Assembly: GCA_000388065.2 (NCBI GenBank)
Contig: KB932206.1
From: Fonticula alba ATCC 38817
Taxonomy: Eukaryota > Protista > Nucleariida
DNA length: 64,000 nt
Direction: 5' to 3' (one strand)
The translations under genes and the position numbers were made by a program. Below, in pieces: positions 49,382 to 62,521 of the stretch. Every line of letters starts with the position of its first letter. Positions within the stretch are counted from its first letter, which is position 1. Under the pieces are notes generated by a model. The model was not told the DNA's origin, made no database searches, and saw nothing but the letters and a program-made list of their open reading frames with translations.

Positions 49382-50952
49382 ACGGGGAGGGGAATCCTTG
49401 TGTGGCCCTTTTTCGCTCGCGCTTTTGGCGGCCTGGTCCTGGGACGCACGCCTTCGGGCACTTCCCCCCCCCCCCCTCCCCCCCCACACCCGTACGACTA
49501 ACACCGAGACGCCTGCCAAGGGCGCGCTCACGAGCCTCCGCATCGGTCGAACGGCCTAGGACCGGTATATGGCCCTCGGCTGGTGGGGGGGGGGGGGGGG
49601 GGGCAACGGCAGAGGACACACCTCGCTCGTTGATGGTGTGGTCGTCGGTGGCACCGCCAGAGCCGACCTGCACACCGCTGCGGGGCACCGTGCCCGATGG
49701 CCGCGCATGCGCGGCACCCCTTGCCCTCAAGAGGACCACATCTCCTGACGAACGCCGGGACAGGGCCAGGAGGATCATTCGCCAGTCAGGGGCCTTGCTG
49801 CCTGCCCCGCGCGGACTCCGAAGACCGCCCTCCTCGCTGGAGCCCGAGCCCCGGGGCATTCGGCCTCGCGCAGGCGCGCGCGCGCGCCAGTTGACAACGT
49901 CCACCCGTGAACATGTTGGCCGGTGGTCGGGCCATCCCCAGACGGGGGGAGCCCGTCCGGGGCGCACCTGCTCGGCGGGCGGCCCGGGCGCCAGATAAAC
50001 GACCCGACATCCCGCCGACGGGGTAGGGCCTGCCCGTGCGCCGAGGGAAAATGTACCCCCCTCGGGGGGCAGAGTTGTCCGGCGTCGCCTTTCGGCCGCC
50101 CCAAGGAGCACCTCGGCCGGCGTTGCACGCTGAAAGCCGGGGAACGGTGTGCCCGGCAAGGGGACGCGACTTTCACCAGCTGGATTGGCGCCCCGGCCCC
50201 GGCCCTTGTGGTCGGCCTGCGCCCCCGAGCCGCCTGACGCCGACACTTTGCAGGGGGGGAGGCGGGAGGGATTCAGCGGACGGCGAAGGAGGCCGGCATT
50301 CTCTCTGGAGACCGCGCCAAGAGTAAAATGTCCCCCCGCGCACCGGGCAGAGGGCACACTTGCTCCCCCCACCTGCTCCCCCGAAAGACATGCCCCCAGG
50401 GCGCCAGCAAGCCGGTCCTCGGGCCGGGGCCCCAAGTGGGCGAGAAAAGGATCCGCGGCCGGGCGAGCATCACCAGAGGAGGAAGCGCACGGGTGGCACA
50501 CGCTCGGGGGGGGGGGGGGACGGGGACCGGCACCGAGAAGGGTGCGCACCGGGAAATGGCTCCCACGATCCTGGCAGACAACAGGGGGTTCCCTCCCGAA
50601 GACCATCGTCGACCAGCCCCCTCCCGGACTCGTCGGCGCCTCAAGGGGGGCGCCCCAGGGGGCGTCTGCCAGCGCCCACCAACAAGCCGAGAGTCACACA
50701 CTGGCGGGCGGACACACTAACGGAGATGAATAAACAAACAGCCCCCGGGCAACGACCGCTCCCCGGGCCGGCATACCCCCCGCCGTCAAACCACCCACAG
50801 GAGAAAGGAGGGCGTGGGCCCTTTTTTTCTTCCCGCCCAGCCGGCCGGCCGGCCGGCCGGCAGAGCACCCTTTTCCTCGAGCCTCGCGTCTTCCCCGGCC
50901 AGGACACAGAGGGGGAGAAGAGGTCGGGACATCGGGGGGGGGCAAAAAACAA

Positions 50953-51024
50953 GGGGAGATCCGGGAATCGAACCCGGGACCTCTCGCACCCTAAGCGAGA
51001 ATCATACCACTAGACTAATCTCCC
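50953..51024 (-). tRNA. tRNA-Pro(AGG)
   Basis: GGGAGAT/ATCTCCC stem, loop TTAGGGT, TTCGA T-loop and a T6 terminator. Confidence 0.96.
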
Positions 51025-51305
51025 TTGATGGGGGAAAACACCCACACCTGCAGCTCAACCCCCTGCGCGTTGGGAGCTGTGTGGCCCTTCTCGCCCGCCT
51101 CGGCGGGCCGGGCGGACCGTCCCCGTTGACCCCCCCCCCCCCCCCGCCTGCCTTGAGGCGTATTTGAGCCTCCGGTGAGAGGGGGGGCCATTGGCGCGTG
51201 GGAATAAAAAAGGAGAGCCGTATGTGGTGGTGGGGAGCATTTGTCACAGGGGACACGCCCCGGAGAGGGGGGCAACATATAGCTGTTTGTCTTTCCAATC
51301 CCCAA

Positions 51306-51376
51306 GCGTCGATGGTTTAGTGGTAGAATTGCCGCCTGCCACGCGGTAGACCCGGGTTCGATTCCCGGTCGACGCA
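51306..51376 (+). tRNA. tRNA-Gly(GCC)
   Basis: GCGTCGA/TCGACGC stem, loop CTGCCAC, TTCGA and downstream TTTT. Confidence 0.96.
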
Positions 51377-51693
51377 GACCCTCTTTTGCGCCGAATGCCA
51401 GCAAGGACAGGGCGCGGAAGCGGGAAAATTCCCCGGATCCCGGCCGTGCCTTCTTTTTTTTTTTTCTTCTGCCTGTCGACACACCGAAGGCCGCCTCGGC
51501 GATCGCTGCCTCGCCAGGGCCATCACGCGCGCCGGGCATGGCTGGCCGTGTGACCGACGTGGGAAGACCGCACTGCGCCCTCCTTCCCTCAGAGATGTCC
51601 ACACACACACACACACACACACAGGTGTAAAGAAAGCATGCGAGAGAGGGGGAGGCCCGATGTGGCCAAGTTATTGCGGGTGCCCGGAAGGGC

Positions 51694-54600
51694 CTAGGAT
51701 CCCGAGTCGAAGAGCAATCGGCCCAGCAACAGCGGAGGCAGGACGGCCTGAACGGCGACATCCGGCCGAGATGCATGCCCCTCATGGCACGGGACCCGGA
51801 GAAAGCCATTGGCCGAGGACGTGGCATCGGCCGGCGATCGAGACATCCACCAGCCTGGCTGGCGGCCGGCGTAATGCCGGCTCGGGCTGGTGCGATCCAT
51901 GCGCAGCATCGTCTGGTCGGCCAGATGGAAGAGGGCATCGTGAACATCGGCCGCGGGAACGAACCGCCGGGCACTGGCCGAGGAGCCGGGGCCGTCCGCC
52001 GGCTCGAAGGCCAGCGCACTGGCCAGCAAGTGTAGCGCCGCAAAGGCCCGAGCCGGCGATGTGAAATGCTCGACCACGGCCGCGGCATCGGCATCCCGGC
52101 GAGGGGCCGCCACACCCAGGCCGCGCAGCAGGCCCGAGCACCGAAGGCCCATGCTGCCGAAGGCATGGGGCACCTTGGCCGCGAGACCCTCCATGGTCAG
52201 GGCCTGGCCAGCGAGGATTTGCCGGTGCCCGGTGAAGAGCTGATCCGCCGGCGTCAAGCCGAAGGCATTCTCCGACAGGAGCCCCTGACGAAGGAGGGCC
52301 CAGTCCACAAGGGCAGATGGCGCGGCCGGGGCCGTGGCACTCGCCCGGCGAAGCTTCTCCACCGAGGCCCCCTCCCCGGCCAGGAGCCCCAGCAAAGTGT
52401 CGGCCATCGGGCCGAGCACATCCATGCCGACGGCGGCCGGGCCGAGAGCATGCACCGCCGGGGCCAGGCCCAGCGCCAGGATCATCTCGGCGGCCAGCGG
52501 GAACTGCGAAAAGCGCAAGGCCACATGCAGGGCGGAGTCCCACCCGCCCGGGGTCCGGTGCTCCGGGTGGAAGAGCTCCGCCCGGGCCAGCAGCACCTGC
52601 CCGGCGGTCGGCCGGCCGGTGGCGAAGCGCTCGCGCGCCAGGGCCACCGCCATCTCCCGGAGCACCCCGTGGGCATTGACCTCGATGGCCAGATGCACCG
52701 CGGTGGTGCAGGCCACCGGGTTCCAGGCGAAGAGGGCCCGGCGCAGGGCCGCCAGCCGAGCCGGGGCCGTGGCGCAGCCGGGGCCCTTGGCCATGGCCGC
52801 CAGAAGCAGGGCCGCCATGGCCGGCTGGTGTGCATGCGCCGCATGGTGCAGCGCGGTCCAGCCACGGAAGGCATCCGCCTGGTGGGGATCGGCCCCCATG
52901 TCGGCCAGCAGGCCGGCCGCCGCGTCCGCCAGGCCCAGGCGAACTGCCAGGGCCAGCGGGCTGAGGGCCACATCGCGCGTGGACACCACCGCCCGGGGCC
53001 GATCCTCCAGGCTGGCGATCGACCCCGAGGCCAGCAGGCTGTTGGGCGGGGCATGGGCATCGACCGCCATGCCGACGGCCGCCAGGGCGGCCACCTGCCC
53101 CGGGTCCAGGCAGTACGGCTCGGCGGTGAGGATTTCCCGAAGGTCCCGCAAGGCCGCCCGCGAATTGAGCATCGCCACCGCCATCAGGGACGTGGTGTAC
53201 TCGGTGTGGCCCGGCCGGCTGGAGGGCATGGCCGGGACCTTGAGCACGGTGTCCAACCGGAAGAGCGCACGCTCGACCGGGTCCGACGAGAGGAACACCT
53301 CCCGGCCGAGGGCACGCAGGACACTTCGCTCGGCGGCCGGCACCAGCTCGGCCAAGCGCCGGACATCCGGCGCCCGGCGGACCCGGAGCTCCCCGGCCGG
53401 CCGGCGCTCCAGGCGCCGGTGCCAAAAGTCGCGGAAGGCCTGCACCGGTGCCGGATCGGCCGCCAGCCACCGAGCCACAGCCACCTGCCCCAGCAGCAGG
53501 GCCACCGTCGGCAGCGGTAGCAGGCTCAGCGGGTGCCGGCTCCGGGGGCTCGGCCCAACCGGCGACCCATGGCCACTGGTCGGACCGTCGGCCCGGCAGC
53601 CAGACCCGGTGGACAAGTCCACCAGGAAGAGCATGTTGCCGGTCGACCGGGCAATCCCCTCGCCCCCGTCGGCCCGACACCGGAAGATGGCATTGGCACC
53701 GGGGCGCGTGAGGACCGTGTGCCGCCGGGAGGCAGCCACCCGGGCATCGGCCGGCATCGGCCACGCCGCAAAGTTGATCCCCCCGCCAAAGCGCCGGAGC
53801 AGCAGCAATAACACCGACCGGGGCAGCCCCATGGCCATGGCAAGGAGGAAGGGCAGGGGCCCGGCATCGGCCTCGGGGCCGGTCGCCACATTGGACATCA
53901 GGCGCTCGGTCAGCCCCATGGCCGGGCGGGGCTGCTCCATGTGGCCCTGGACCCGGGCCGCCCGACCCTCCACCCGGGTGACCGCCTCTTCCACCAGGCA
54001 GAGACCATTCAGAAGGGCAAGCACCAGCTCCAGGGCATGCGCCTCGCCCTGGGCAAGCCCGGCCGCATGGAAAAGGGTCTCATTGATGATGCTCAGGCGG
54101 ATGGGCTGACCCGGCGGCGGTGGCGGCGGCCGCGGCCGCGTCGAGCACATGCCCAGGCCGCCCAGCTGCCGGAGCAGGTCGCGCCCGAGGGCATCCCCCG
54201 GGATCGGGGCCCGCTGGTCGTCCCACTGGAGCAGGCTCGCCAGCGAGGGAACCCCATCCTCCCCCAGCTCATGGTCATTGACGTGGACAGTGGGGCCATC
54301 GAGAGCGCTCGCCAATTGGACCCTCGCGGCGGTGGTAATGGCCCCGGTGGTGGCCGTCAGCCGATGGAGGCCCAGCAGCTGGGCAGCCCCATGGCCCGGG
54401 CGACGACGGCCCTCGGGCAGGAAGGCATGCCATTGGAGGAGGGAATACATCGGGTTGATGGTGCTGAAGCGCCGGTGGCCCGGGTGCTCCGGCTCCGACA
54501 TCCCGGCCGCATGGTCGGGCTGAGGCCCATGGTCGGGCCGAGCCGCGCGCCGAGCCAGACGGTTGGCCCGGCCGGCGCGGTGGCAGGCCTCTTGCGCGGC

Positions 54601-57600
54601 TTCGGCCCGCGAAAGGGGAACCCCCATGGCAGCCATGTGCCCGGTGCCCGCCTCGCGGGCTGCCCACTCATCCAAGTATCCGGCATCCTCATCGGAGAAG
54701 TCCGACCGGTCGCCATCGCCCGGACCGGCGAACGCCGTCGCAAGCAAAGCAACATTGGGGTCGTGGCCGGGGCGCTTGGCCGCCGCCCCGGCGGCCCGCG
54801 CGGCGTCCTCCGCCGCAAGACGCACGGCCCGCCGGCTGACCTTCGGCCGGTACTGGCTGGCCAGGCGGCCCAGGAGAAGCTCCACCATGGGCCCCGGCCG
54901 GGGCAAGAATCGCACCGCCATGCGCAGGGGGGTCGTATGCGCCTGGCCATGGAGCTTGCAATCGACCAGCGCCACCCGGGCCCCATGCTTCGAGGGGTCG
55001 GTCAGGTCGGCCACCCGGTCGAGATCCCCGGCGAAGACCGCCTCAAAGAGCTCCCGATAGATGGCCTCATTGGCCGGACCGGTGACCGGGTGACCGGCCG
55101 CCCAATAGGCAACACGCAAGGGAGGGGCATCCTTGGGCGCGGATGCCGGGGCGGCCCGAGTGCCCGGGCGCGGGGGACCCCCTCGCGTGCCCGGCCGGCC
55201 GGTGGCCGTCGCCTCGCCGGTGGCACTCGCCTCCGCGAAGGCCACCATCTGCTGGAGAACCCCCGGCAATGCCTTCAACGTGGCCATGGACAAGCACCGC
55301 GCAAAGGCCTCGAGACCATGGTGGCCGGCCAGGCCGTCAGCACCTCCCGCCTCGTGGGCGATGGCCGCCTGCAGCGCCTCCACGGTGACGGCCTGGTAAA
55401 GGGCCTCCGCCTCGGCGCCGGTCAGGGACTTCCACCGGCGCCGGCCGAACTCATTGACCAACTGGCTGGCCAGTCGGGCAGGCTCGTCGAAGCCATACTG
55501 CCGTGTGCGCTTCGGCCGGGCAGCCTCGCCCACGGCTTCGGCATACATCCGGTCGAAGGAGGTGCACATGCCAAAATCATGGGCCAGCATCCGCCGCATG
55601 GCATCCAGGCGTTGGAAGGAATCCGCCCGCCGGGCGCACATGGCATCGGTCACGGCGGTCGAGGCCTGCTCCATGGCCTCGACGAGGTGCGGCTTGAGCC
55701 GGGACGCGCCGAGCACGGCCCGGCCCCCGGCCAAAGGACCCGCCCCTGCACCACCCCCGGCGGGGATGCCAAAGCGCCTGGCATCGCGATCATCGGCACG
55801 CTCACCGGCCGGCAGGCCCAGCATATAGTTGACGACGGCCAAGTCCCGAAGCAAAAGCGTGACGATGGCCCCCGGGCCCGGGCCCGCTGATGGGCCCGCC
55901 TGCTGGAGCCCCTCGTGGCGGTCAATCTCGCGCAAAATCTGCCGACGGCCCTTCATCGTGCCCAGCACCGTGCACATGCCCTCCAGGGGGAAGAGCTCCA
56001 GCAGGTCGAGCCGCCCGATGGGGGAGCGCACCCTTCGCGGGAGGCGGTCCCGCAGGCGGATCGCATTCCGCAGGAGGAATACATCATCATCATGATCCGA
56101 CAGCCGCGCGGCCGGCATGGCCAGCCCGCTGACATCCCCGATCCTCAGCCACAGCGGCGCATCGGCGGCCGGCCGCTCGTCGGTGTAGTCCTCATGGTCG
56201 GGCGGCAAGTCCAGGGCCTCGGCCAAATCGGCATCCAAATCCACCGGGGCCGCGTCGGTTCCGGTCCGCCGCCAGCCGGAGGAGTCGGGCCCCGGGGCGG
56301 CCATGGCTGCGGGCTGGCCGGCCGGGCCGGAGCATGGCCGAAGCCCCGGGCTGCTGGCAAGCACCGAGGCATGCTCATTCCGGAGGGCCTTCTTGATGGC
56401 ACGCATGGCCATGCGAATGGAGGCCACCTCGACGCCGGCCCCATTGACAGCCACCTCATTGGTGGAGGTGGTCTTCTTGAGCTCGTTATTGGAGTAGATC
56501 TGATCGACGAGGTCGAAGAGCTCCGGTGCCGCGTTCCGTAACAGCGCCAGCTGCTCGAGATCACCACCGCAGAGGGTGATCATTTGCGCGGCGGCGGCCA
56601 CCACAAAATCGGCCAAATTGCACCTGCGGTCCGCGCTGCTGGCTGCATGGGTGGCAGCAGTCGCATGCTGGGTGCCTTGTTGCTGGGGTGCGGAGTGGCT
56701 CGACGGCGGCATGCTGAAGCTGTGCGGCATCCTGGTCGGATGCACCCGCAGGGGCGTCGGCGAGGAAGAAAGCGAGAAAGCCACCGAACGACACCATAAA
56801 AAGGGCGAATGTGGGAGGAGGGGGACATTGAGATGAAAAGAAAAAAAACAGCCAACGAGTCAAAGAGACAACGAGACAGAGAGAGAGATCCATGAAAAAA
56901 AAAGACGCATGTTGATGGAGGTAGAGCGAGAGAGAGAGAGAGAGAGATGGGTCAGTTGAGGGCAGCATGAAGGACGGGAAAGGCGCCCGATGGAGTCAGG
57001 CACGCACGAGGGGACGCTTTGGAAGGTCAACTCCTCCGCCGGAGCTGCGACCGCATGAAGGATCAGTCCAAGCACCCGGGGAAGGCGGGTCATCAGTGCC
57101 AGGTGGAAGGGCTGCGTATGGAGCCTGACATGGGCGTAGGCTTGCTCCATTCCCGGTGGCCGATCCTCGGGCCAGACGCGCAGCAACAGCTCCTTCGAGG
57201 CGGCAAGGTGGGACGCCCGCACGAGGGCCGGCGCACCAAGGCGAAGCAGAGCCTCCACCGTGTGGGCGGTCATTTGCTCACGGGCGGCACGGCTCAGCCC
57301 TCCGCGCAAAATGACCGGCATGCTACGCCGGCCGAAATCCGTCGCCAATTGGTAGCCAAATCGAATGGCCAGAGCCAGGGGATTCAGCTGGCCGGTGGTG
57401 ACATGCGCGAGCACCGGGCCCAAGGCCTCGGGTGGGAAGCACTTCGCCACGAAGTCGGCCAGCAGGTCCCCGCGCAGGCGGACGGCATACACCCCCAGGA
57501 CATTCAGCTGGCTGGTCAGGAGCATGTCCACCAAGGTGGCCGGTTGGGAGCGCATGGGGCCCGGGCCGGCCGACTCGGCCCGGGCAATGGCCACCAAATC

Positions 57601-60600
57601 CACCCCCTCCACCAGCAGCCGGGCCAGGGCCACAGCCACGGCACTGTCCTCCACAAAGGCCACCAACATCAAGGGGGTCATGGCGTCTCGATCATTGCCG
57701 GCGAAGGGCAGGCAGGGGCGCGACGCGTCGGCCCCATGGGCCAAGAGCACCCGCACGCAGGCCACATGCCCGAAGAGCACGGCATAATGCAGGGGGGTCA
57801 GGTGGCCATCCCAATCTTCGCAATCCACCGAAACGAAGGCCTCGCGCATGGCGACCACGTCCTTGGGATCGGCATCGCCGGCGATCTCGGCGGAGGAGGT
57901 GCTGGCGACATGAATGTCCGGATCATCGTCGGACTCGGCCATGGCCAGCATGTCCTCAAGTTCCGAATCATCCGGGGCGAGGCCATCCTCATGCCCATCC
58001 TCATGCTCATCAGCATACTCATCATACTCATCATCATACTCATCATCATACTCATCTTCATACTCATCTTCATACTCATCTTCATACTCATACTCATACT
58101 CATACTCATCTTCATCAAATGAGCCATCAGATTCACACATGTCCTCAGACGAGCCATACCCACTGTCGGCATCTGGACCACCCTCCTTGGAGCTGCCCTC
58201 GGCGGAGGCAGCACCCCCGTCTATGCTGTGGGAATCCGCCGAGTGCCCAGCAAAGTCCCAAGCACCTGTGTCAACCGCATTCGGGGCGACCGCCCGGTGG
58301 CCCGGGCCATTGTTGAGCCGGTCCCGGGAAGGGGCAGCATGCTCGGGGCCGATGCGCGAGGCCCGGCGAATGCGGCGAGCCTCCAGCAGGAGCTCGCGCA
58401 CTTGGTGATTGTATGCCAGCATGTCGGCCAGGATGTCCGGGCGATTGTAGTGCGCCGCAAAGTGCAGCGGGGTCCGGCCATTGAAGGCGCGCTCCGAGAG
58501 GTTGGGCTGCACATGCTCCGGCAGGGACAGCTCCAGACATGGCTCCAGCTCGGCCAGCAGCCGCCGGTCCGCCTCCGCCGTCATGGGGTCCAGGCAAGTG
58601 GAATGACGCAGACGCAGGACAGCCGCCTGCAGAGACCGCAAGCCGGCATCCAACAGGGCCCGGGCCAGGGCCCGCCGGTTGGCCAGCACCGCCAGGATCA
58701 AGGGGGTCCGGCCGAGCGAATCCCGCGCGTCCAGGCGTATGCCATGGACATCGTGCAAACGCCGGGCGGCGTGGTCTCGGGCCACCACGGCCAGGGCAAG
58801 GGCCGACCGGGCGGCCGCCAGTCGATCGGCCCAGGTGGCCTCGTCGGCCTCCACCACCAGAAACCCCTCGAAGTCCAGGGACACCGTGGCGGTGGCGCTG
58901 CCGGCTTCGGCCGCCTCCACCGCGGCCAGAGCCTCGGCGAGGGCCCGATCGGCGGCCTCCTTCTCGGCGCAGGCCGCCTGCCGCTGGCGGGTGAAGCGCT
59001 CGGATGCCACATCCAGAGCCCGGCGGAAGAGGGCCATGTTGCCGGTGGCCGCCGCCGTGGCCAGCAGGTCGGTGGATTCGGGGAGCAAGGCCGGCTCGAG
59101 CCAATCGCCCTCGGTGATGGGCCGAAAGGACCCGATGGACTGGCGCCCGGGATCGTCGGCCAGGAAGACCAGCGGCCCATGGACAAAGCCCGAGGTGTGA
59201 ATGTCAAAGTCCGCCGGGAAGGCCGGGCAAAATCCACAACAATCCTCCAACACGGCGGCCATGCGCCCCACAAAGCAGGGATGGGTGTGGAAGGTCTTGC
59301 GGCGATCGAACCAGGGGGAATTCAGCATGGCGTCCTTGCCGGCCATGAGATGCTGAATGGCTCGGGCATTCCAGCTGGGCCCCCAGGGCAGGAAGACCGT
59401 GGCATAGTCCGACAAGTGGCTGATGTCGCTTCCCAGCAGCTGGTCCCGGAGAAAGGGGTCGCCGCTGAGGCGGTCTTCGATCTGCTGTCGAAGGTACCCC
59501 CCGGCCGGGGGGCTGCCGACAAGGGCGTTTCCCGGCCCGAGGGCCTCTTTGGAGGGGCTGCGCATGCGGCGAAGGCGCTGCTCATCGCGATAATTTTGGA
59601 CGGCCGCCGGGGTCCGGAGGCGCTCGAGGACCAGAAGCCGGGCCAGGCCCTGGACCCGGTCGAAAGAGCGCTCCAAAATTTGCGGATCCACCCGGGCCAA
59701 TTCGTAGAAGGGGCTCCGCACGGCAAAGCCACGGGCCGCGTACTTGGCCAGCCGGGTCTCGTAGGAGGGCGACCGCCGGGACATGTCAATGGTGTTCCGC
59801 TGGAACACCAGCGCCGCATGGGCACGGGGCAGGGCATAAACTTGCCGCCCATCGAAGGCCACACTGCAGCAGTCCACATCGAACCCCATGAGCACCTCGG
59901 CCGGGGAGGCATACCGGCGGAGGACAAGTTGCACATGGCGATAGGGGAACTGGCTGACAATGGACACGGCGTACTTCGAGCGGAAGACCAAGGTCCCATG
60001 GGGGATGGCATTGGAAATGGCCTCATATAGCTCCAGGAGCTTGGCCCGGGCGGCTTCCTCATCCAGGCCGTAGATGAAGAGGTCGATGTCGGAAGACCGG
60101 TACAGCACATTGTGGTAAAGGTACCGCTGGCGCTTGGGGGAGATGTCCTCGCCCGGGGGGGTGGCCGCGGCGCCGGTGAGCATGGGCGTGGAGGAGTCCA
60201 CCTGGAGCAATGCCCGGGCCTGGGCCACCTGCCCCGAGGCCACATCGGCATCCTCCACGAATGTGAGAGAGGTGTCCGGGTCGAAGACCGGCATGAGGCT
60301 GGCCAGGACCGCGCCGCCCGCCACGATGACATTGTCCCAATTGACATAGCGCAGGGCATTCTCCGTGAAGAGCTCCCAGTTCCGGTGGAAGGCCGCAAGG
60401 GTCCCGGCGGTGGCCGGCTGGCCGGGGCCCTTGCGAAAGCGCTGCCCCTCGGGGCACTGGGTGAACATCATGCGAAAGACCGGCCGGCCATCAGGGCCGA
60501 GGGCGCTTGCTTCGTGGGCCTCGCGTGCGACCAGCACCCCGGGCGCTTGGTCAAAGAGGGGGATCATCATCAGGTGGGGGTCTTGCAAGTCGACATGGTC

Positions 60601-60888
60601 CGGCTGCTGGGCGAAGAGGGTGCGGTAGTGGTTTTCGCGATCGACAACCGCCTGTCGAGCCGACACCCATGGGGCCAAAGGATCGGCCGAGTGTGCACCC
60701 CCCGAGGCAGAGGGAGTCGGGCACAGGGTCAGACCATGGGGGGGGGAGGGGGGGGGGGGGGGGGGCGATCTCGCGGCAGGGCGCACCTGGAAACGCTCGC
60801 CGACATCGGGCGCAGCATCCTGGTGGCCAAAGGCGGCCAGGTAGTGGGCCAGGATCTCCCGCGTGCAGGGGGACATGCCGTCCGGCAT
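51694..60888 (-). CDS. Giant uncharacterised protein (~2,900 aa): N-terminal nucleotidyltransferase-fold (GG...DxD) domain followed by several ankyrin-repeat blocks. The two track ORFs are joined by an intron.
   Basis: NVIVAGGAVLASL...SDIDLFIYG...RHVQLVLRRY...FDVDCC...RRSPSYETRLAKYAARGF. Ankyrin repeats: GRTPLILAV, GRTPLHFAAHY, LTPLHYAVLFGH, SPLALAVRLG, GWTALHHAAH, TTAVHLAIE, DSALHVALRF. The donor GTGCGT at 57007 and the acceptor CAG ending at 56624 are phase-compatible. Confidence 0.82.
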
Positions 60889-62449
60889 GGGGGCTTATCG
60901 GCTGGATCTCCGCACGGAGGCTCGGTCCGTGGCGCTTTGTCCCGTCCAGCCCGATGCTCCGGAGGGGCGTGCCGATTCCGGCCAAGCTGTGACAAGAGCC
61001 CCGACCAAAGAGAGGGGGTATCGAGACAAGGCACAACGAACCAGCTGGCCGGATCCCCCGGACAAAGGGAACAAGAAGATGCTTGTCTGTGTGCGAAGGA
61101 GAGAGGGGGAGGGAGAGAAGGGGGGGAGGGAGAGAAGGAGGGAAGGAGACTGTACTCGGGCTTCGAGAGAGACAGAGAGAGAGAGAGAGAGAGGGAGGGA
61201 GGGAGGGAGAGTGGCACCGTCTATTTCACTTGAAGGGACAAGGAGGAGAGGGAGGTTCCGATGAACTCCCCCAGATCGCACCGCCGGGCGACCTCTCGGC
61301 ACAGGGAGGGTCGAGCCGGGCGACGAGCGCATATCGGACCGGTGGGCCAGATCCTTCGGGGTCATTTTGCACAAAAGAATGGCACTGCTCCGAGTTGGAG
61401 GCGAATGGCCAAGTCCCACGGGCCCGGAGCCGGCAACAAAGGGCCAAGGAAATGGGCGGTGGCCGCGAAGTGCGAGTCAGCCGCAGGCCCGGGTACCGAG
61501 GCGAGCAAGGACAAAGAAGAGCCCGCCGGGGAACGCCCATCCCCTGCATCTGGAGGGGCACCGGAAAAAGGGGCGCTCTCCCAGGGATGGCCCTCCTCGC
61601 CGGGGGGGGGGGGGGGGCACCCGTGCGGCCCCATCGGGGAGGCTTGAGCCCCCAGAGAGAACAAGGGGCCGGGAACCGCCCGACCGGGCTGTGATGCATG
61701 CCGGAAGAGAGATGCCTTGCCGGGGGGTGGCGGCGGTGTGGGCCCGGGGGAGTGAAAAAAAAAAAGAGCCCATCCCCCGTGGAGAGCCGCGGTGGGGACG
61801 AAGCGGGATCGGGCAGGGTCCAGAGGCCCCCCCATCGATGGGACCGCAGGATTTCGAAGTTCCCACCCCGGAGGAGGTCCGCACTCCTGGCGGGCCCACG
61901 GCCTTCACACGGCCGCTCAGTCGCGCCATCACCCCGAAAAACGGGCCGAGAGTCTAGACCGCGGCCAGATGCCGAGCAGAAGCGGCCATTTCGTCGGGGG
62001 GCGACACTGTGTGCCGGGGCGCAGGCGCATCCCCCCCCCCCGGCATGCTTGCGTGCAAATATGCACCATGGAGCACACAAGCAGAGACCAGTCCAGGGAT
62101 ATATGGATTCAAGAATACAAATAAACAAATACACCCTTTTTCGGGCACACGCCTGCAGACACACACGGAAAAAGGGCAACTAGCCGCGGAACAGCCCGGC
62201 ACACGACAGACAATCCTGGATGCGCCAATCGCCCACGGCTGGGGGGGGGGGGGGAACAAGAATCCGATGGGCGCGCGCCCCTCCCCGCGGTCCCGGTGGT
62301 CGGCCCCTTTCGGTGGTTGGCCTCGACCCATGCCCGGCAAAAGAAAGGTGGCGCAGCGGCAAACCATAGTCCCATCCCGAGCATCCTGCCAGGGTGGGGG
62401 GGGGGGCGACTAAAGCGAGTGCAATCAGCCCCCATGGGCAAAATATATG

Positions 62450-62521
62450 TGCTCATTGGGTGGATCGAACACCCGACCTCCAGTTTACTAGACTGGCGCT
62501 CTACCACTGAGCTAAACGAGC
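62450..62521 (-). tRNA. tRNA-Thr(AGT)
   Basis: GCTCGTT/AATGAGC stem, anticodon loop CTAGTAA, TTCGA. Confidence 0.95.

What the first reader, a model, noticed from the sequence alone, without database searches (positions are those of the whole stretch)
51694..60888. A ~2,900-aa nucleotidyltransferase-fold + ankyrin giant: candidate sensor-coupled NTase system
Seen: the two long minus-strand ORFs (1342 and 1696 aa) join through a phase-compatible intron (GTGCGT at 57007 to CAG at 56624, giving ...FQSVPS-CNLADF...). The N-terminal domain (~59560-60400) has hAGG, then after a ~50-aa insert SDIDLF, then QLVLR...FDVDCC. At least seven recognisable ankyrin repeats in several blocks follow, with helical linkers. 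Known: GG...DxD plus a distal Asp is the two-metal signature of Pol-beta-superfamily NTases (CCA-adding enzymes, poly(A) polymerases, OAS/cGAS-like enzymes), and ankyrin arrays commonly act as ligand sensors. From memory it resembles a conserved fungal family annotated only as ankyrin repeat protein; that needs a search. Inference: an intact NTase gated by a large repeat scaffold could be an undescribed RNA-tailing or nucleotide second-messenger/defence enzyme.
Basis: partly seen in the sequence, partly recalled or inferred. Interest (0 to 1): 0.75.

Follow-up and report, generated by a model that had tools for sequence, protein, structure and literature searches.

The report
Giant Gad2-type nucleotidyltransferase–ankyrin gene
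This is one real, transcribed gene of about 2,930 residues in the amoeba Fonticula alba. Its front end is an intact nucleotide-transferring enzyme of the same family as the phage anti-defence protein Gad2, a family found across fungi and giant viruses whose substrate is unknown in any organism.

Summary
The two minus-strand ORFs are real and belong to one gene. One contig from a 2012 run that is probably RNA joins them. A second intron, in frame and free of stops (60786-60652), is very likely, because both Fonticula paralogues have an annotated intron at exactly that position. The CDS is then about 2,927 aa.

The N-terminal module folds well (pLDDT 81). It matches class II CCA-adding enzymes and poly(A) polymerases (Z 9.2), not cGAS-like enzymes (Z about 3). 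G[GS], DxD and FDxD are invariant in 60 homologues. Close homologues and both paralogues carry Pfam PF26128 (Gad2). A profile comparison with validated phage Gad2 aligns every motif in order (E 2e-4).

Three ankyrin blocks are confirmed. The roughly 1,200-aa central scaffold has relatives only in two Fonticula paralogues among 1.84 billion proteins.

My most likely reading is a template-independent nucleotidyltransferase acting on an RNA or other nucleic-acid end and positioned by the ankyrin scaffold. Its function is untested. This scan had already reported both paralogues on other DNA with the same reading, so this is a new member of a known kind.

The parts
60787..60888 (-). Exon 1a: ATG at 60888, 34 codons ending ...VGERFQ
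   Evidence: ORF start. The N-terminus runs in the same order as paralogue P0121 from aa 5. Contig depth is zero upstream of about 61020.
60652..60786 (-). Candidate intron 1: 135 nt, phase 0, no stop codon, donor GTGCGC, acceptor ACAG. It contains a long poly-C tract.
   Evidence: Sequence. Both paralogues have an annotated intron at the homologous position, before (A/D)(V/L)(V/I)(D/N)RENH. It is not directly shown by RNA here. The reads tool skipped the poly-C repeat, and one contig stops at 60650 with 44 further letters.
57008..60651 (-). Exon 1b: nucleotidyltransferase module, ankyrin blocks 1 and 2, acidic repeat
   Evidence: Continuous ORF, covered by contigs with no other joints. 57.7% identical to P0121.
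56732..57007 (-). Intron 2: 276 nt, GT..AG, donor GTGCGT, acceptor CAG 56734-56732. It splits a TC|G Ser codon.
   Evidence: Joint in an X1 contig with 59 nt on the short side. Sequence. Paralogue introns lie in the equivalent region.
51694..56731 (-). Exon 2: 1,678 codons plus stop
   Evidence: ORF. 47% identical to P0121 aa 1200-2773.
58969..60651 (-). Gad2-family (PF26128) class-II-like nucleotidyltransferase module, ORF aa ~80-640
   Evidence: 140 homologues, best E 2e-111, nearly all carrying PF26128.2. AlphaFold2 pLDDT 81.3, pTM 0.83. Matches to class II tRNA nucleotidyltransferases by Foldseek and VIA-align. Atlas TM 0.81 to a PF26128 cluster.
60313..60324 (-). hG[GS] motif: VAGG, aa 189-192, at the N-terminus of a helix
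   Evidence: A130 is nearly invariant and G131 invariant in alignment A1. Strand 127-130 then helix 132-138 in the model.
60148..60273 (-). 42-aa loop insert between GG and DxD, absent from the family profile, low model confidence
   Evidence: hhalign insert states. pLDDT below 50 at domain residues 149-181. Paralogue P0121 has the same GG-to-DxD spacing.
60082..60090 (-). DxD catalytic pair: D267, D269
   Evidence: Invariant D207 and D209 in A1. They align to invariant D45 and D47 of phage Gad2.
59929..59931 (-). Invariant Gln (Q320) on the strand where class II enzymes carry the third carboxylate
   Evidence: Invariant Q260 in A1 aligned to invariant Q88 of Gad2. A conserved Gln at this place is described for pandoravirus relatives. 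The equivalence is inferred.
59872..59883 (-). FDVD motif (aa 336-339). D337 is the probable counterpart of the class II motif B Asp.
   Evidence: F276, D277 and D279 invariant. Phage Gad2 has FDFT and E. coli Cca has RRDLT. Pandoravirus relatives have DFD in place of RRD.
59740..59778 (-). RRSPSYETRLAKY block, the most conserved motif of the eukaryotic branch
   Evidence: R311 R312 S313 Y316 E317 R319 L320 K322 Y323 invariant. R..KY is shared with Gad2. It resembles SPAFGEDPLR..RF of E. coli Cca; this is a resemblance only.
58414..58815 (-). Ankyrin block 1 (aa ~692-825)
   Evidence: Ank_2 E 3.1e-10, and Ank, Ank_3 and Ank_4 above their cut-offs.
57984..58117 (-). Tandem DNA repeat (period 12/24) encoding a 34-aa Glu/Asp/Tyr tract, absent from paralogue P0121
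   Evidence: Tandem Repeats Finder. Acidic run at aa 925 found only in this copy.
57649..57846 (-). Ankyrin block 2 (aa ~1015-1080)
   Evidence: Ank_2 6.7e-17, Ank_5 3.3e-15.
53131..56730 (-). Fonticula-specific scaffold of about 1,200 aa with no known domain, predicted helical
   Evidence: No Pfam hit. Exhaustive phmmer against 1.84 billion representatives finds only P0121 and P0242.
52798..52962 (-). Ankyrin block 3 (exon 2 aa ~1257-1311)
   Evidence: Ank_2 5.2e-7, Ank_4 8.8e-6 when the segment is scanned alone.

Best explanation
One spliced, transcribed Fonticula alba gene encodes a protein of about 2,927 aa. Its exons are 60888-60787, 60651-57008 and 56731-51694 on the minus strand.

The first 600 or so residues form an intact nucleotidyltransferase of Pfam family PF26128 (Gad2). 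This is a Pol-beta-fold enzyme whose head and neck resemble class II CCA-adding enzymes and bacterial poly(A) polymerase.

Shown: the fold, the family, the invariant G[GS], DxD, Gln, FD and R..KY residues, the single-gene structure, the three ankyrin blocks, and the fact that the long helical scaffold exists only in three Fonticula paralogues.

Inferred: the enzyme uses the DxD pair and two metal ions to transfer a nucleotide from an NTP to a hydroxyl acceptor. The acceptor is most probably the 3' end of an RNA or another nucleic acid, and no template is used. The ankyrin blocks and scaffold would bind partner proteins that bring the substrate or control access to it.

My confidence is about 0.9 for identity and architecture and about 0.35 for the nucleic-acid-end tailing mechanism. 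The figure below is a blend of the two.
For: One gene:
- A contig joint runs from 57008 to 56731 with GT..AG ends.
- Both paralogues match in the same order across both ORFs.
- Their annotated introns lie at the same two positions.

Family:
- 140 homologues, best E 2e-111, carry PF26128.2.
- Both paralogues carry it too.
- Validated SPbetaL7 Gad2 and its homologues carry the same Pfam family.
- hhalign of the eukaryotic profile against the Gad2 profile gives E 2e-4 over 147 columns, with every motif in order.
- Both groups hit phrog_1614 and phrog_4400.

Fold:
- AlphaFold2 pLDDT 81, pTM 0.83.
- The 35 best VIA-align rows are all class II tRNA nucleotidyltransferases, PAP or TENT5, with top Z 9.2 over 176 residues at rmsd 3.5.
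- The Foldseek top hit is the same class, E 7.6e-4.
- cGAS-like CD-NTases reach only Z 3.1-3.5.

Active site: invariant residues in 60 sequences, and 85-95% identity between paralogues over the core.

Precedent: pandoravirus BTB-fused relatives were read as class II nucleotidyltransferases with a Gln at the third-carboxylate position and DFD in place of RRD.
Against: - No biochemical data exist for any family member. The mechanism of Gad2 was still listed as unknown in February 2026.
- Class II motif B (RRD) and the class II EDxxR motif are not strictly present. The equivalents here are GFD and YETR.
- The tRNA-binding body and tail of CCA-adding enzymes are not recognisable.
- Pfam PolyA_pol does not hit. 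The only match is Polbeta at E 0.18.
- The GG-to-DxD spacing is 74 aa, against the classical 9-13.
- The link to phage Gad2 by profile comparison is weak (probability 47%).
- The local Pfam copy lacks PF26128, so this protein itself was not scored against that model.
- The splice junction rests on one contig of depth about 5, from a run whose RNA nature is only a guess by the tool.
Confidence: 0.55

Rival explanations
1. Sensor-coupled nucleotide second-messenger synthase or immune enzyme. The ankyrin and scaffold region would sense a ligand or invader, and the nucleotidyltransferase would make a signalling nucleotide, as cGAS, OAS and CD-NTases do.
For: - The family behaves like a conflict family. 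Its phage member is an anti-defence gene.
- Giant viruses carry many paralogues fused to BTB, F-box, VWFA and ankyrin domains.
- Some eukaryotic members are fused to PARP catalytic, TPR or kinase domains.
- Distribution in fungi is patchy, with several copies in one species, for example three in Gymnopilus.
Against: - Structural similarity to CD-NTases, DncV and CdnE is low (Z 3.1-3.5), against 9.2 for CCA/PAP-type enzymes.
- PADLOC has no hit.
- There is no effector or receptor domain, and no Walker A or STAND module.
- The three Fonticula copies are 82% identical in the core and look strongly constrained rather than diversifying.
Confidence: 0.12
2. Nucleotidylyltransferase acting on a protein or small molecule (AMPylation-like). 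The ankyrin repeats would hold the protein substrate.
For: - The Pol-beta fold also includes protein and antibiotic nucleotidylyltransferases (established knowledge).
- Ankyrin, BTB and F-box partners are protein-binding modules.
- The RNA-binding body and tail of CCA-adding enzymes are missing.
Against: The best structural matches are all RNA-end enzymes and include the neck region. No GlnE-, KNT- or MNT-type enzyme appears among the top rows.
Confidence: 0.15
3. Catalytically inert scaffold: a pseudoenzyme that keeps the fold only for binding.
For: The third carboxylate typical of many Pol-beta enzymes appears to be a Gln. Motifs RRD and EDxxR are altered.
Against: G[GS], both DxD aspartates, FD and the R..KY block are invariant from phage to eukaryotes. 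The preprint, citing Hou et al. 2005, reports that class II CCA enzymes need only the two motif A carboxylates.
Confidence: 0.05
4. Two independent genes: a nucleotidyltransferase-ankyrin gene and a separate downstream ankyrin gene.
For: A stop codon and 276 nt of low-complexity sequence separate the ORFs. Only one contig bridges them.
Against: The joint has canonical GT..AG ends and keeps the frame. Both paralogues are annotated as single proteins that run in the same order across the junction, with an intron in the same region.
Confidence: 0.03

Closest known systems
Fonticula alba paralogues H696_03796 (P0121, 2,773 aa, KB932206.1) and P0242 (2,959 aa, KB932201.1)
   Same: Same architecture from end to end. 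Identity is 57.7% / 47.3% and 52.7% / 36.5% over exon 1 / exon 2, and 82% in the enzyme core. The catalytic motifs are identical, and introns lie at the same two positions.
   Different: This copy has a 34-aa acidic Glu/Asp/Tyr tandem-repeat tract that P0121 lacks. It also lacks the extra intron that P0242 has after aa 478.
Phage anti-Gabija protein Gad2 (SPbetaL7, OQ921347.1; Pfam PF26128)
   Same: Same Pfam family by way of homologues. The motifs align in the same order: GG, DxD, TK, Q, FD, R..KY. A nucleotidyltransferase fold is predicted for both.
   Different: Gad2 is a stand-alone protein of 400 aa with the classical 12-aa GG-to-DxD spacing and FDFT instead of FDVD. It lacks the RRSPSYE block and has no ankyrin repeats. 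The tree branch between the two groups is very long. Its anti-Gabija role has no counterpart in a eukaryote.
Fungal and other eukaryotic PF26128 proteins, stand-alone (380-500 aa) or fused to ankyrin repeats (600-970 aa)
   Same: 36-44% identity over the whole enzyme module, with the same invariant residues. The ankyrin fusion is the commonest architecture.
   Different: They are three to seven times shorter. They lack the 42-aa loop insert and the Fonticula-specific scaffold.
Giant-virus relatives (Fadolivirus ankyrin protein A0A7D3QUG1; pandoravirus BTB-nucleotidyltransferase 'cluster 7'; giant-virus metagenome-assembled genomes (GVMAGs))
   Same: Foldseek E 1.9e-34 with TM 0.68 by query. 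36% identity over 470-520 aa in giant-virus metagenome-assembled genomes. The same substitutions occur: Gln at the third-carboxylate position and (D)FD for RRD.
   Different: The fusion partners differ (BTB, F-box, VWFA). The authors proposed a viral tRNA-maturation role, which is not tested.
Class II tRNA nucleotidyltransferases and bacterial poly(A) polymerase (Pfam PolyA_pol; PDB 3wfo, 3h39, 1miv, 3aqm)
   Same: Pol-beta head plus neck, Z 7-9.2 over 160-190 residues. hG[GS]...DxD is present, and the motif B Asp and the helix after it have recognisable counterparts.
   Different: No significant sequence match to the Pfam models of this clan (PolyA_pol absent, Polbeta E 0.18). RRD and EDxxR are not kept. 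There is no tRNA-binding body or tail. The GG-to-DxD loop is long.

Membership tests
Pfam PF26128 (Gad2) | Significant match to the family HMM | tested here: inconclusive
   The local Pfam copy lacks the model: P0001 and P0050, which carry PF26128.2 in the precomputed tables, give no hit locally. Indirect support is strong. Homologues at E 2e-111 and both paralogues at 53-58% identity carry PF26128.2. The nearest atlas clusters are 85-96% PF26128.
Pfam PF26128 (Gad2) | Homology to the experimentally validated Gad2 of phage SPbetaL7 | tested here: met
   hhalign of A1 against the Gad2 alignment A2: E 2e-4, probability 47%, 147 columns in the same order covering all motifs. Both hit phrog_1614 and phrog_4400. 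The result is weak but consistent. A single sequence against the profile was not significant.
Pfam PF26128 (Gad2) | Conserved residues shared by both branches: G-G/S, DxD, Q, FD, R..KY | tested here: met
   All are present in the window protein and invariant in A1 and A2.
Pfam PF26128 (Gad2) | Anti-Gabija activity | not testable with these tools
   This is a phage-bacterium phenotype and is not expected in a eukaryote.
Pol-beta superfamily nucleotidyltransferase | Strand, hG[GS], helix, then a DxD strand within an alpha/beta core | tested here: met
   Model: strand 127-130, G131-G132, helix 132-138, DxD at the start of strand 208-213, pLDDT above 90 in these blocks. All top structural matches are Pol-beta nucleotidyltransferases.
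Pol-beta superfamily nucleotidyltransferase | Third metal-binding carboxylate on the neighbouring strand | tested here: inconclusive
   Model coordinates cannot be read with these tools. By order along the chain, the strand position is held by invariant Q320, and the invariant D337 follows a helix. The same is reported for pandoravirus relatives.
Class II CCA-adding enzyme / poly(A) polymerase (PF01743) | Match to the PolyA_pol HMM | tested here: not met
   No PolyA_pol hit even at E up to 10. The only match is Polbeta PF18765, E 0.18-0.3.
Class II CCA-adding enzyme / poly(A) polymerase (PF01743) | Motif B (RRD) and the EDxxR motif | tested here: not met
   The window has GFD and SYETR where E. 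coli Cca has RRD and GEDPLR. The correspondence comes from a comparison by eye.
Class II CCA-adding enzyme / poly(A) polymerase (PF01743) | Head plus neck fold | tested here: met
   VIA-align Z 9.2 to 3wfo_C (176 aa, rmsd 3.5), Z 8.2 to 3h39_A, Z 7.3 to 3aqm_A.
cGAS / OAS / CD-NTase (Mab21-like) | Closest structural neighbours are of this class | tested here: not met
   CdnE Z 3.5, DncV Z 3.1-3.4. No PADLOC hit.
Ankyrin repeat proteins | Pfam Ank-family matches above the gathering score | tested here: met
   Ank_2 62.3 bits, Ank_5 56.4 bits. Three separate blocks.
STAND / NLR-like sensors | P-loop NTPase module between effector and repeats | tested here: not met
   No Walker A motif in either exon or in P0121. 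No NACHT or NB-ARC hit in Pfam.

The most novel reading that the evidence does not exclude
Gad2-type enzymes may form an ancient, unrecognised class of nucleic-acid-end modifying nucleotidyltransferases used in host-parasite conflicts from phages to giant viruses and eukaryotes. On this reading, the three Fonticula giants are a lineage-specific form in which a 2,300-aa ankyrin and helical platform couples the enzyme to a cellular or viral target. Working out one member would then explain both how Gad2 defeats Gabija and what the many giant-virus copies do.
Probability: 0.2. Interest if true: 0.7.

Novelty: new member of a known kind. Interest (0 to 1): 0.45.

Why it matters
PF26128 is an enzyme family with clear catalytic residues and no known substrate. 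It spans phages (where it defeats the Gabija defence), giant viruses (many fused paralogues) and a wide range of eukaryotes.

The Fonticula genes show that the module was inherited vertically in the fungal lineage and kept under strong constraint. They also show it can be built into very large proteins. A biochemical answer for any member would settle an open question in phage counter-defence and annotate hundreds of hypothetical proteins.

For this locus in particular, the practical gain is a corrected gene model: two introns, with the acceptor moved by 108 nt.

Tried and rejected
- Local Pfam, NCBIfam and PADLOC scans of the enzyme module gave nothing beyond Polbeta at E 0.18. This was uninformative for PF26128 because the local Pfam copy lacks it.
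- phmmer and a profile search against PDB sequences found only ankyrin proteins.
- tblastn of the core against 50,697 phage records found no match.
- hhalign of the family profile against single sequences of E. coli Cca and of Gad2 was not significant. Only the profile-profile run reached E 2e-4.
- AlphaFold2 of exon 2 aa 500-1678 with a three-sequence alignment gave pLDDT 35. It is unusable, so no fold search was made on it. The scaffold's fold therefore remains unknown.
- The loose-end sequences of contigs at 57410 and 58908 are not in the window. None of the four loose-end sequences (57410, 58908, 59063, 56117) is in the P0121 locus. They remain unexplained.
- A STAND/NLR reading was rejected because there is no P-loop.
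- The joined spliced protein was never built, translated or searched. All searches were made exon by exon by reference. The protein's own database entry and its own PF26128 score were therefore not looked up.
Full report
**Observation**

The window is GC-rich (about 65%). This agrees with the only relatives of the C-terminal half, which are F. alba proteins on NCBI assembly GCA_000388065.2.

The donor GTGCGT at 57007-57002 and a CAG at 56626-56624 exist and are phase-compatible.

**Gene structure**

Four small runs from 2012 of one study hold 45-78% of the locus's sampled words. They are kept as contigs, and the tool only guesses that they are RNA. Laid on 55450-61400, they behave like RNA:
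- Coverage is patchy over the ORFs.
- Coverage is almost absent between 56843 and 57041.
- Coverage is zero upstream of about 61020.

One X1 contig (depth 5.3, 59 nt on the short side) joins 57007/57008 to 56731. It skips 276 nt whose ends read GT..AG on the minus strand.

The acceptor is the CAG at 56734-56732, 108 nt upstream of the proposed one. This keeps the frame (TC|G = Ser, then MPHSFSM...) and adds 36 residues. This is a single contig, so the junction is supported but not heavily.

Independent support comes from the paralogues. P0121 (H696_03796, 2,773 aa) aligns in the same order with exon 1 (aa 5-1279, 57.7%) and exon 2 (aa 28-1676, 47.3%). P0242 (2,959 aa) does likewise. Both are annotated as single genes with an intron in the equivalent junction region.

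A second intron was missed. After ...VGERFQ (60787) the sequence reads GTGCGC, and 135 nt later ACAG|GCG GTT GTC GAT (60651). This stretch has no stop codon and holds a long poly-C tract. Both paralogues lack these 45 residues, and both have an annotated intron at exactly this point:
- P0121: ...VGTRLQ | 111 nt with stops | DLIDRENH.
- P0242: aa 32 | 127 nt | AVVNRENH.

The reads tool skipped the poly-C repeat. One X3 contig stops at 60650 with 44 further letters that are not listed as a loose end, which is suggestive only.

I take the CDS as 60888-60787 + 60651-57008 + 56731-51694 = 2,927 aa. It would be 2,972 aa if intron 1 is retained. Residue numbers below follow the uninterrupted ORF. The joined product was not built or searched, and everything was done exon by exon.

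**The enzyme module**

A word search with ORF aa 61-640 found 140 proteins, the best at E 2e-111 (chytrid Blyttiomyces). They come from chytrids, Glomeromycota, Ascomycota, Basidiomycota, Anaeramoeba and transcriptomes of other protists. Nearly all carry Pfam PF26128.2 (Gad2). Many also carry ankyrin repeats, and a few carry PARP catalytic, TPR or kinase domains.

In a 60-sequence alignment the invariant residues (domain numbering; add 60 for ORF numbering) are:
- G131 of the A-G-[GS] motif.
- D207 and D209.
- Q260.
- F276, D277 and D279.
- The block R311 R312 S313 .. Y316 E317 . R319 L320 . K322 Y323.

With that alignment, AlphaFold2 gives pLDDT 81.3 and pTM 0.83. GG sits at a helix N-terminus after a strand, and DxD sits at the start of the next strand.

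Structural matches:
- Foldseek against the PDB ranks class II tRNA nucleotidyltransferases first (E 7.6e-4).
- VIA-align gives Z 9.2 (176 aa, rmsd 3.5) to 3wfo. The 35 best entries are all CCA-adding enzymes, bacterial PAP or TENT5/FAM46. CD-NTases (CdnE, DncV) reach only Z 3.1-3.5.
- In the ESM Atlas the best shapes are PF26128 clusters (TM 0.81 by target), then PolyA_pol clusters.

**Link to phage Gad2**

Gad2 is the anti-Gabija protein of phage SPbetaL7. It has 400 aa, is predicted to be a nucleotidyltransferase, and is toxic when expressed in bacteria (bioRxiv 10.1101/2023.05.01.538930). Its mechanism was still listed as unknown in February 2026 (PMC12904381).

I fetched the annotated gene (OQ921347.1 109563-110765). 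Its 120 best bacterial and prophage homologues carry PF26128.2 (all but one short fragment), so the Pfam family is indeed this Gad2.

Profile against profile, the eukaryotic and Gad2 alignments match at E 2e-4 (probability 47%). The 147 aligned columns run in the same order and pair these motifs:
- IAGG with VAGG.
- DxDVYF with DIDLFIYG.
- TKKAT with RTKNAIT.
- VQxIHF with VQLVLR.
- TFDFTVCMGAFD with GFDVDCCSVAFD.
- LRVQKY..KGY with TRLAKY..RGF.

Both groups also hit phrog_1614 ('nucleotidyltransferase') and phrog_4400. The local Pfam copy lacks PF26128, so the window protein was not scored directly.

Gad2 has the classical 12-residue GG-to-DxD spacing. Fonticula has 74 residues, of which 42 are an insert relative to the family profile.

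**Which Asp does what (inference)**

E. coli Cca reads GGAVRD..DRD, then ...DLKRRDLTINALAQD, then SPAFGEDPLRVLRVARF. By order along the chain and by secondary structure, FDVD-CCSVAFD corresponds to RRDLT-INALAQD (motif B). RRSPSYETRLAKYAARGF lies where the EDxxR helix lies. The invariant Gln sits on the strand where class II enzymes have their third carboxylate.

A preprint on pandoravirus BTB-fused relatives reached the same reading (10.1101/2023.12.02.569716): a conserved Gln at the third-carboxylate position, DFD in place of RRD, and conserved Arg residues downstream. It cites Hou et al. 2005 as showing that class II CCA enzymes need only the two motif A carboxylates.

**Rest of the protein**

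Pfam supports ankyrin blocks at aa ~692-825 and ~1015-1080 of exon 1 and at aa ~1257-1311 of exon 2. A regular-expression scan for the ankyrin core found six TPLH-type cores, and reading the translations adds a few weaker candidates.

A 34-aa Glu/Asp/Tyr tract is encoded by a tandem repeat at 57984-58117 and is absent from P0121.

Exon 2 aa 1-1200 has no Pfam domain. An exhaustive phmmer search of 1.84 billion representative proteins finds only P0121 (1e-254) and P0242 (4.7e-139). There is no Walker A motif. Folding the last 1,179 residues with three sequences failed (pLDDT 35).

**Evolution**

In a quick maximum-likelihood tree of the enzyme core:
- The three Fonticula copies form one clade (support 100, 82% identity).
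- That clade sits inside a holomycotan clade (support 98), next to chytrids.
- Anaeramoeba and other protists lie outside.
- Phage and bacterial Gad2 lie on a very long branch.

This fits vertical inheritance followed by triplication in Fonticula.

Giant viruses carry the family as well. There are 63 BFVD models at E below 1e-3, the best being a Fadolivirus ankyrin protein at E 1.9e-34, with BTB, F-box and VWFA fusions among them. Ten IMG/VR giant-virus loci reach 36% identity over 470-520 residues.

**Mechanism**

Shown: an intact enzyme module of PF26128 with a class-II-like fold, in one transcribed giant gene with ankyrin blocks.

Inferred: DxD-dependent, template-independent transfer of a nucleotide to a nucleic-acid 3' end. 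RNA is the most probable acceptor, because every close structural neighbour is an RNA-end enzyme. The ankyrin and helical platform would recruit or restrict the substrate.

The rivals are a second-messenger synthase, a nucleotidylyltransferase acting on a protein or small molecule, a pseudoenzyme, and two separate genes. They are weighed in the Rival explanations section.

**Novelty**

The family is in Pfam, giant-virus relatives have been discussed in a preprint, and this scan has already reported both paralogues with the same reading. I found no paper containing the accession PF26128. The papers returned by searches combining Gad2 with eukaryote, ankyrin, fungi or giant-virus terms, judged by their titles and abstracts, do not describe eukaryotic members.

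This locus is a new member of a known kind. Its interest lies in the unsolved biochemistry of the family.

Noticed in passing
window 57984-58117: A tandem repeat of period 12/24 (CATCATCATACT on the + strand) encodes a 34-residue run of Glu, Asp and Tyr inside the giant protein. Paralogue P0121 has no such tract.
   Followed up: partly
window 60733-60776, 56913-56957 and 61093-61217: A long poly-C run lies inside candidate intron 1. (CT)n and poly-T tracts lie inside intron 2. GAGA and G-rich repeats (61105-61146, 61165-61211) lie just upstream of the gene. The reads tool skips these places, so splice evidence there is hidden.
   Followed up: partly
window 57410, 58908, 59063, 56117: Contigs of up to three runs (57410 and 58908 in three, the others in one) leave the locus at these points and continue for about 255 nt (55 nt at 56117). 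The 57410 and 58908 sequences are not in the window, and none of the four is in the P0121 locus. They could be assembly chimeras, the third paralogue or trans-joined RNA. This is unexplained.
   Followed up: partly
L005:2562-2778 (paralogue P0242, KB932201.1): The third paralogue has an extra intron after aa 478, inside the enzyme module. This gene does not have it, because a contig runs unbroken over 59174-59654.
   Followed up: yes
P0075, P0089, P0118, P0077, P0086 (homologues); atlas row 2: PF26128 modules also occur fused to PARP catalytic domains, a protein kinase, TPR repeats and, in haptophyte-labelled proteins, BTB domains. This range of partners was not analysed.
   Followed up: no
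L003:1564-2766 (phage SPbetaL7 Gad2): Gad2 gives a weak PADLOC hit to the candidate defence family PDC-S19 (E 3e-4, profile positions 187-296). A related nucleotidyltransferase may therefore also sit on the defence side.
   Followed up: no
window 50000-62500, both strands: There are many long overlapping ORFs (up to 660 aa) in other frames and on the + strand across the gene. They are typical of 65-74% GC coding DNA, and none has support as a gene.
   Followed up: no
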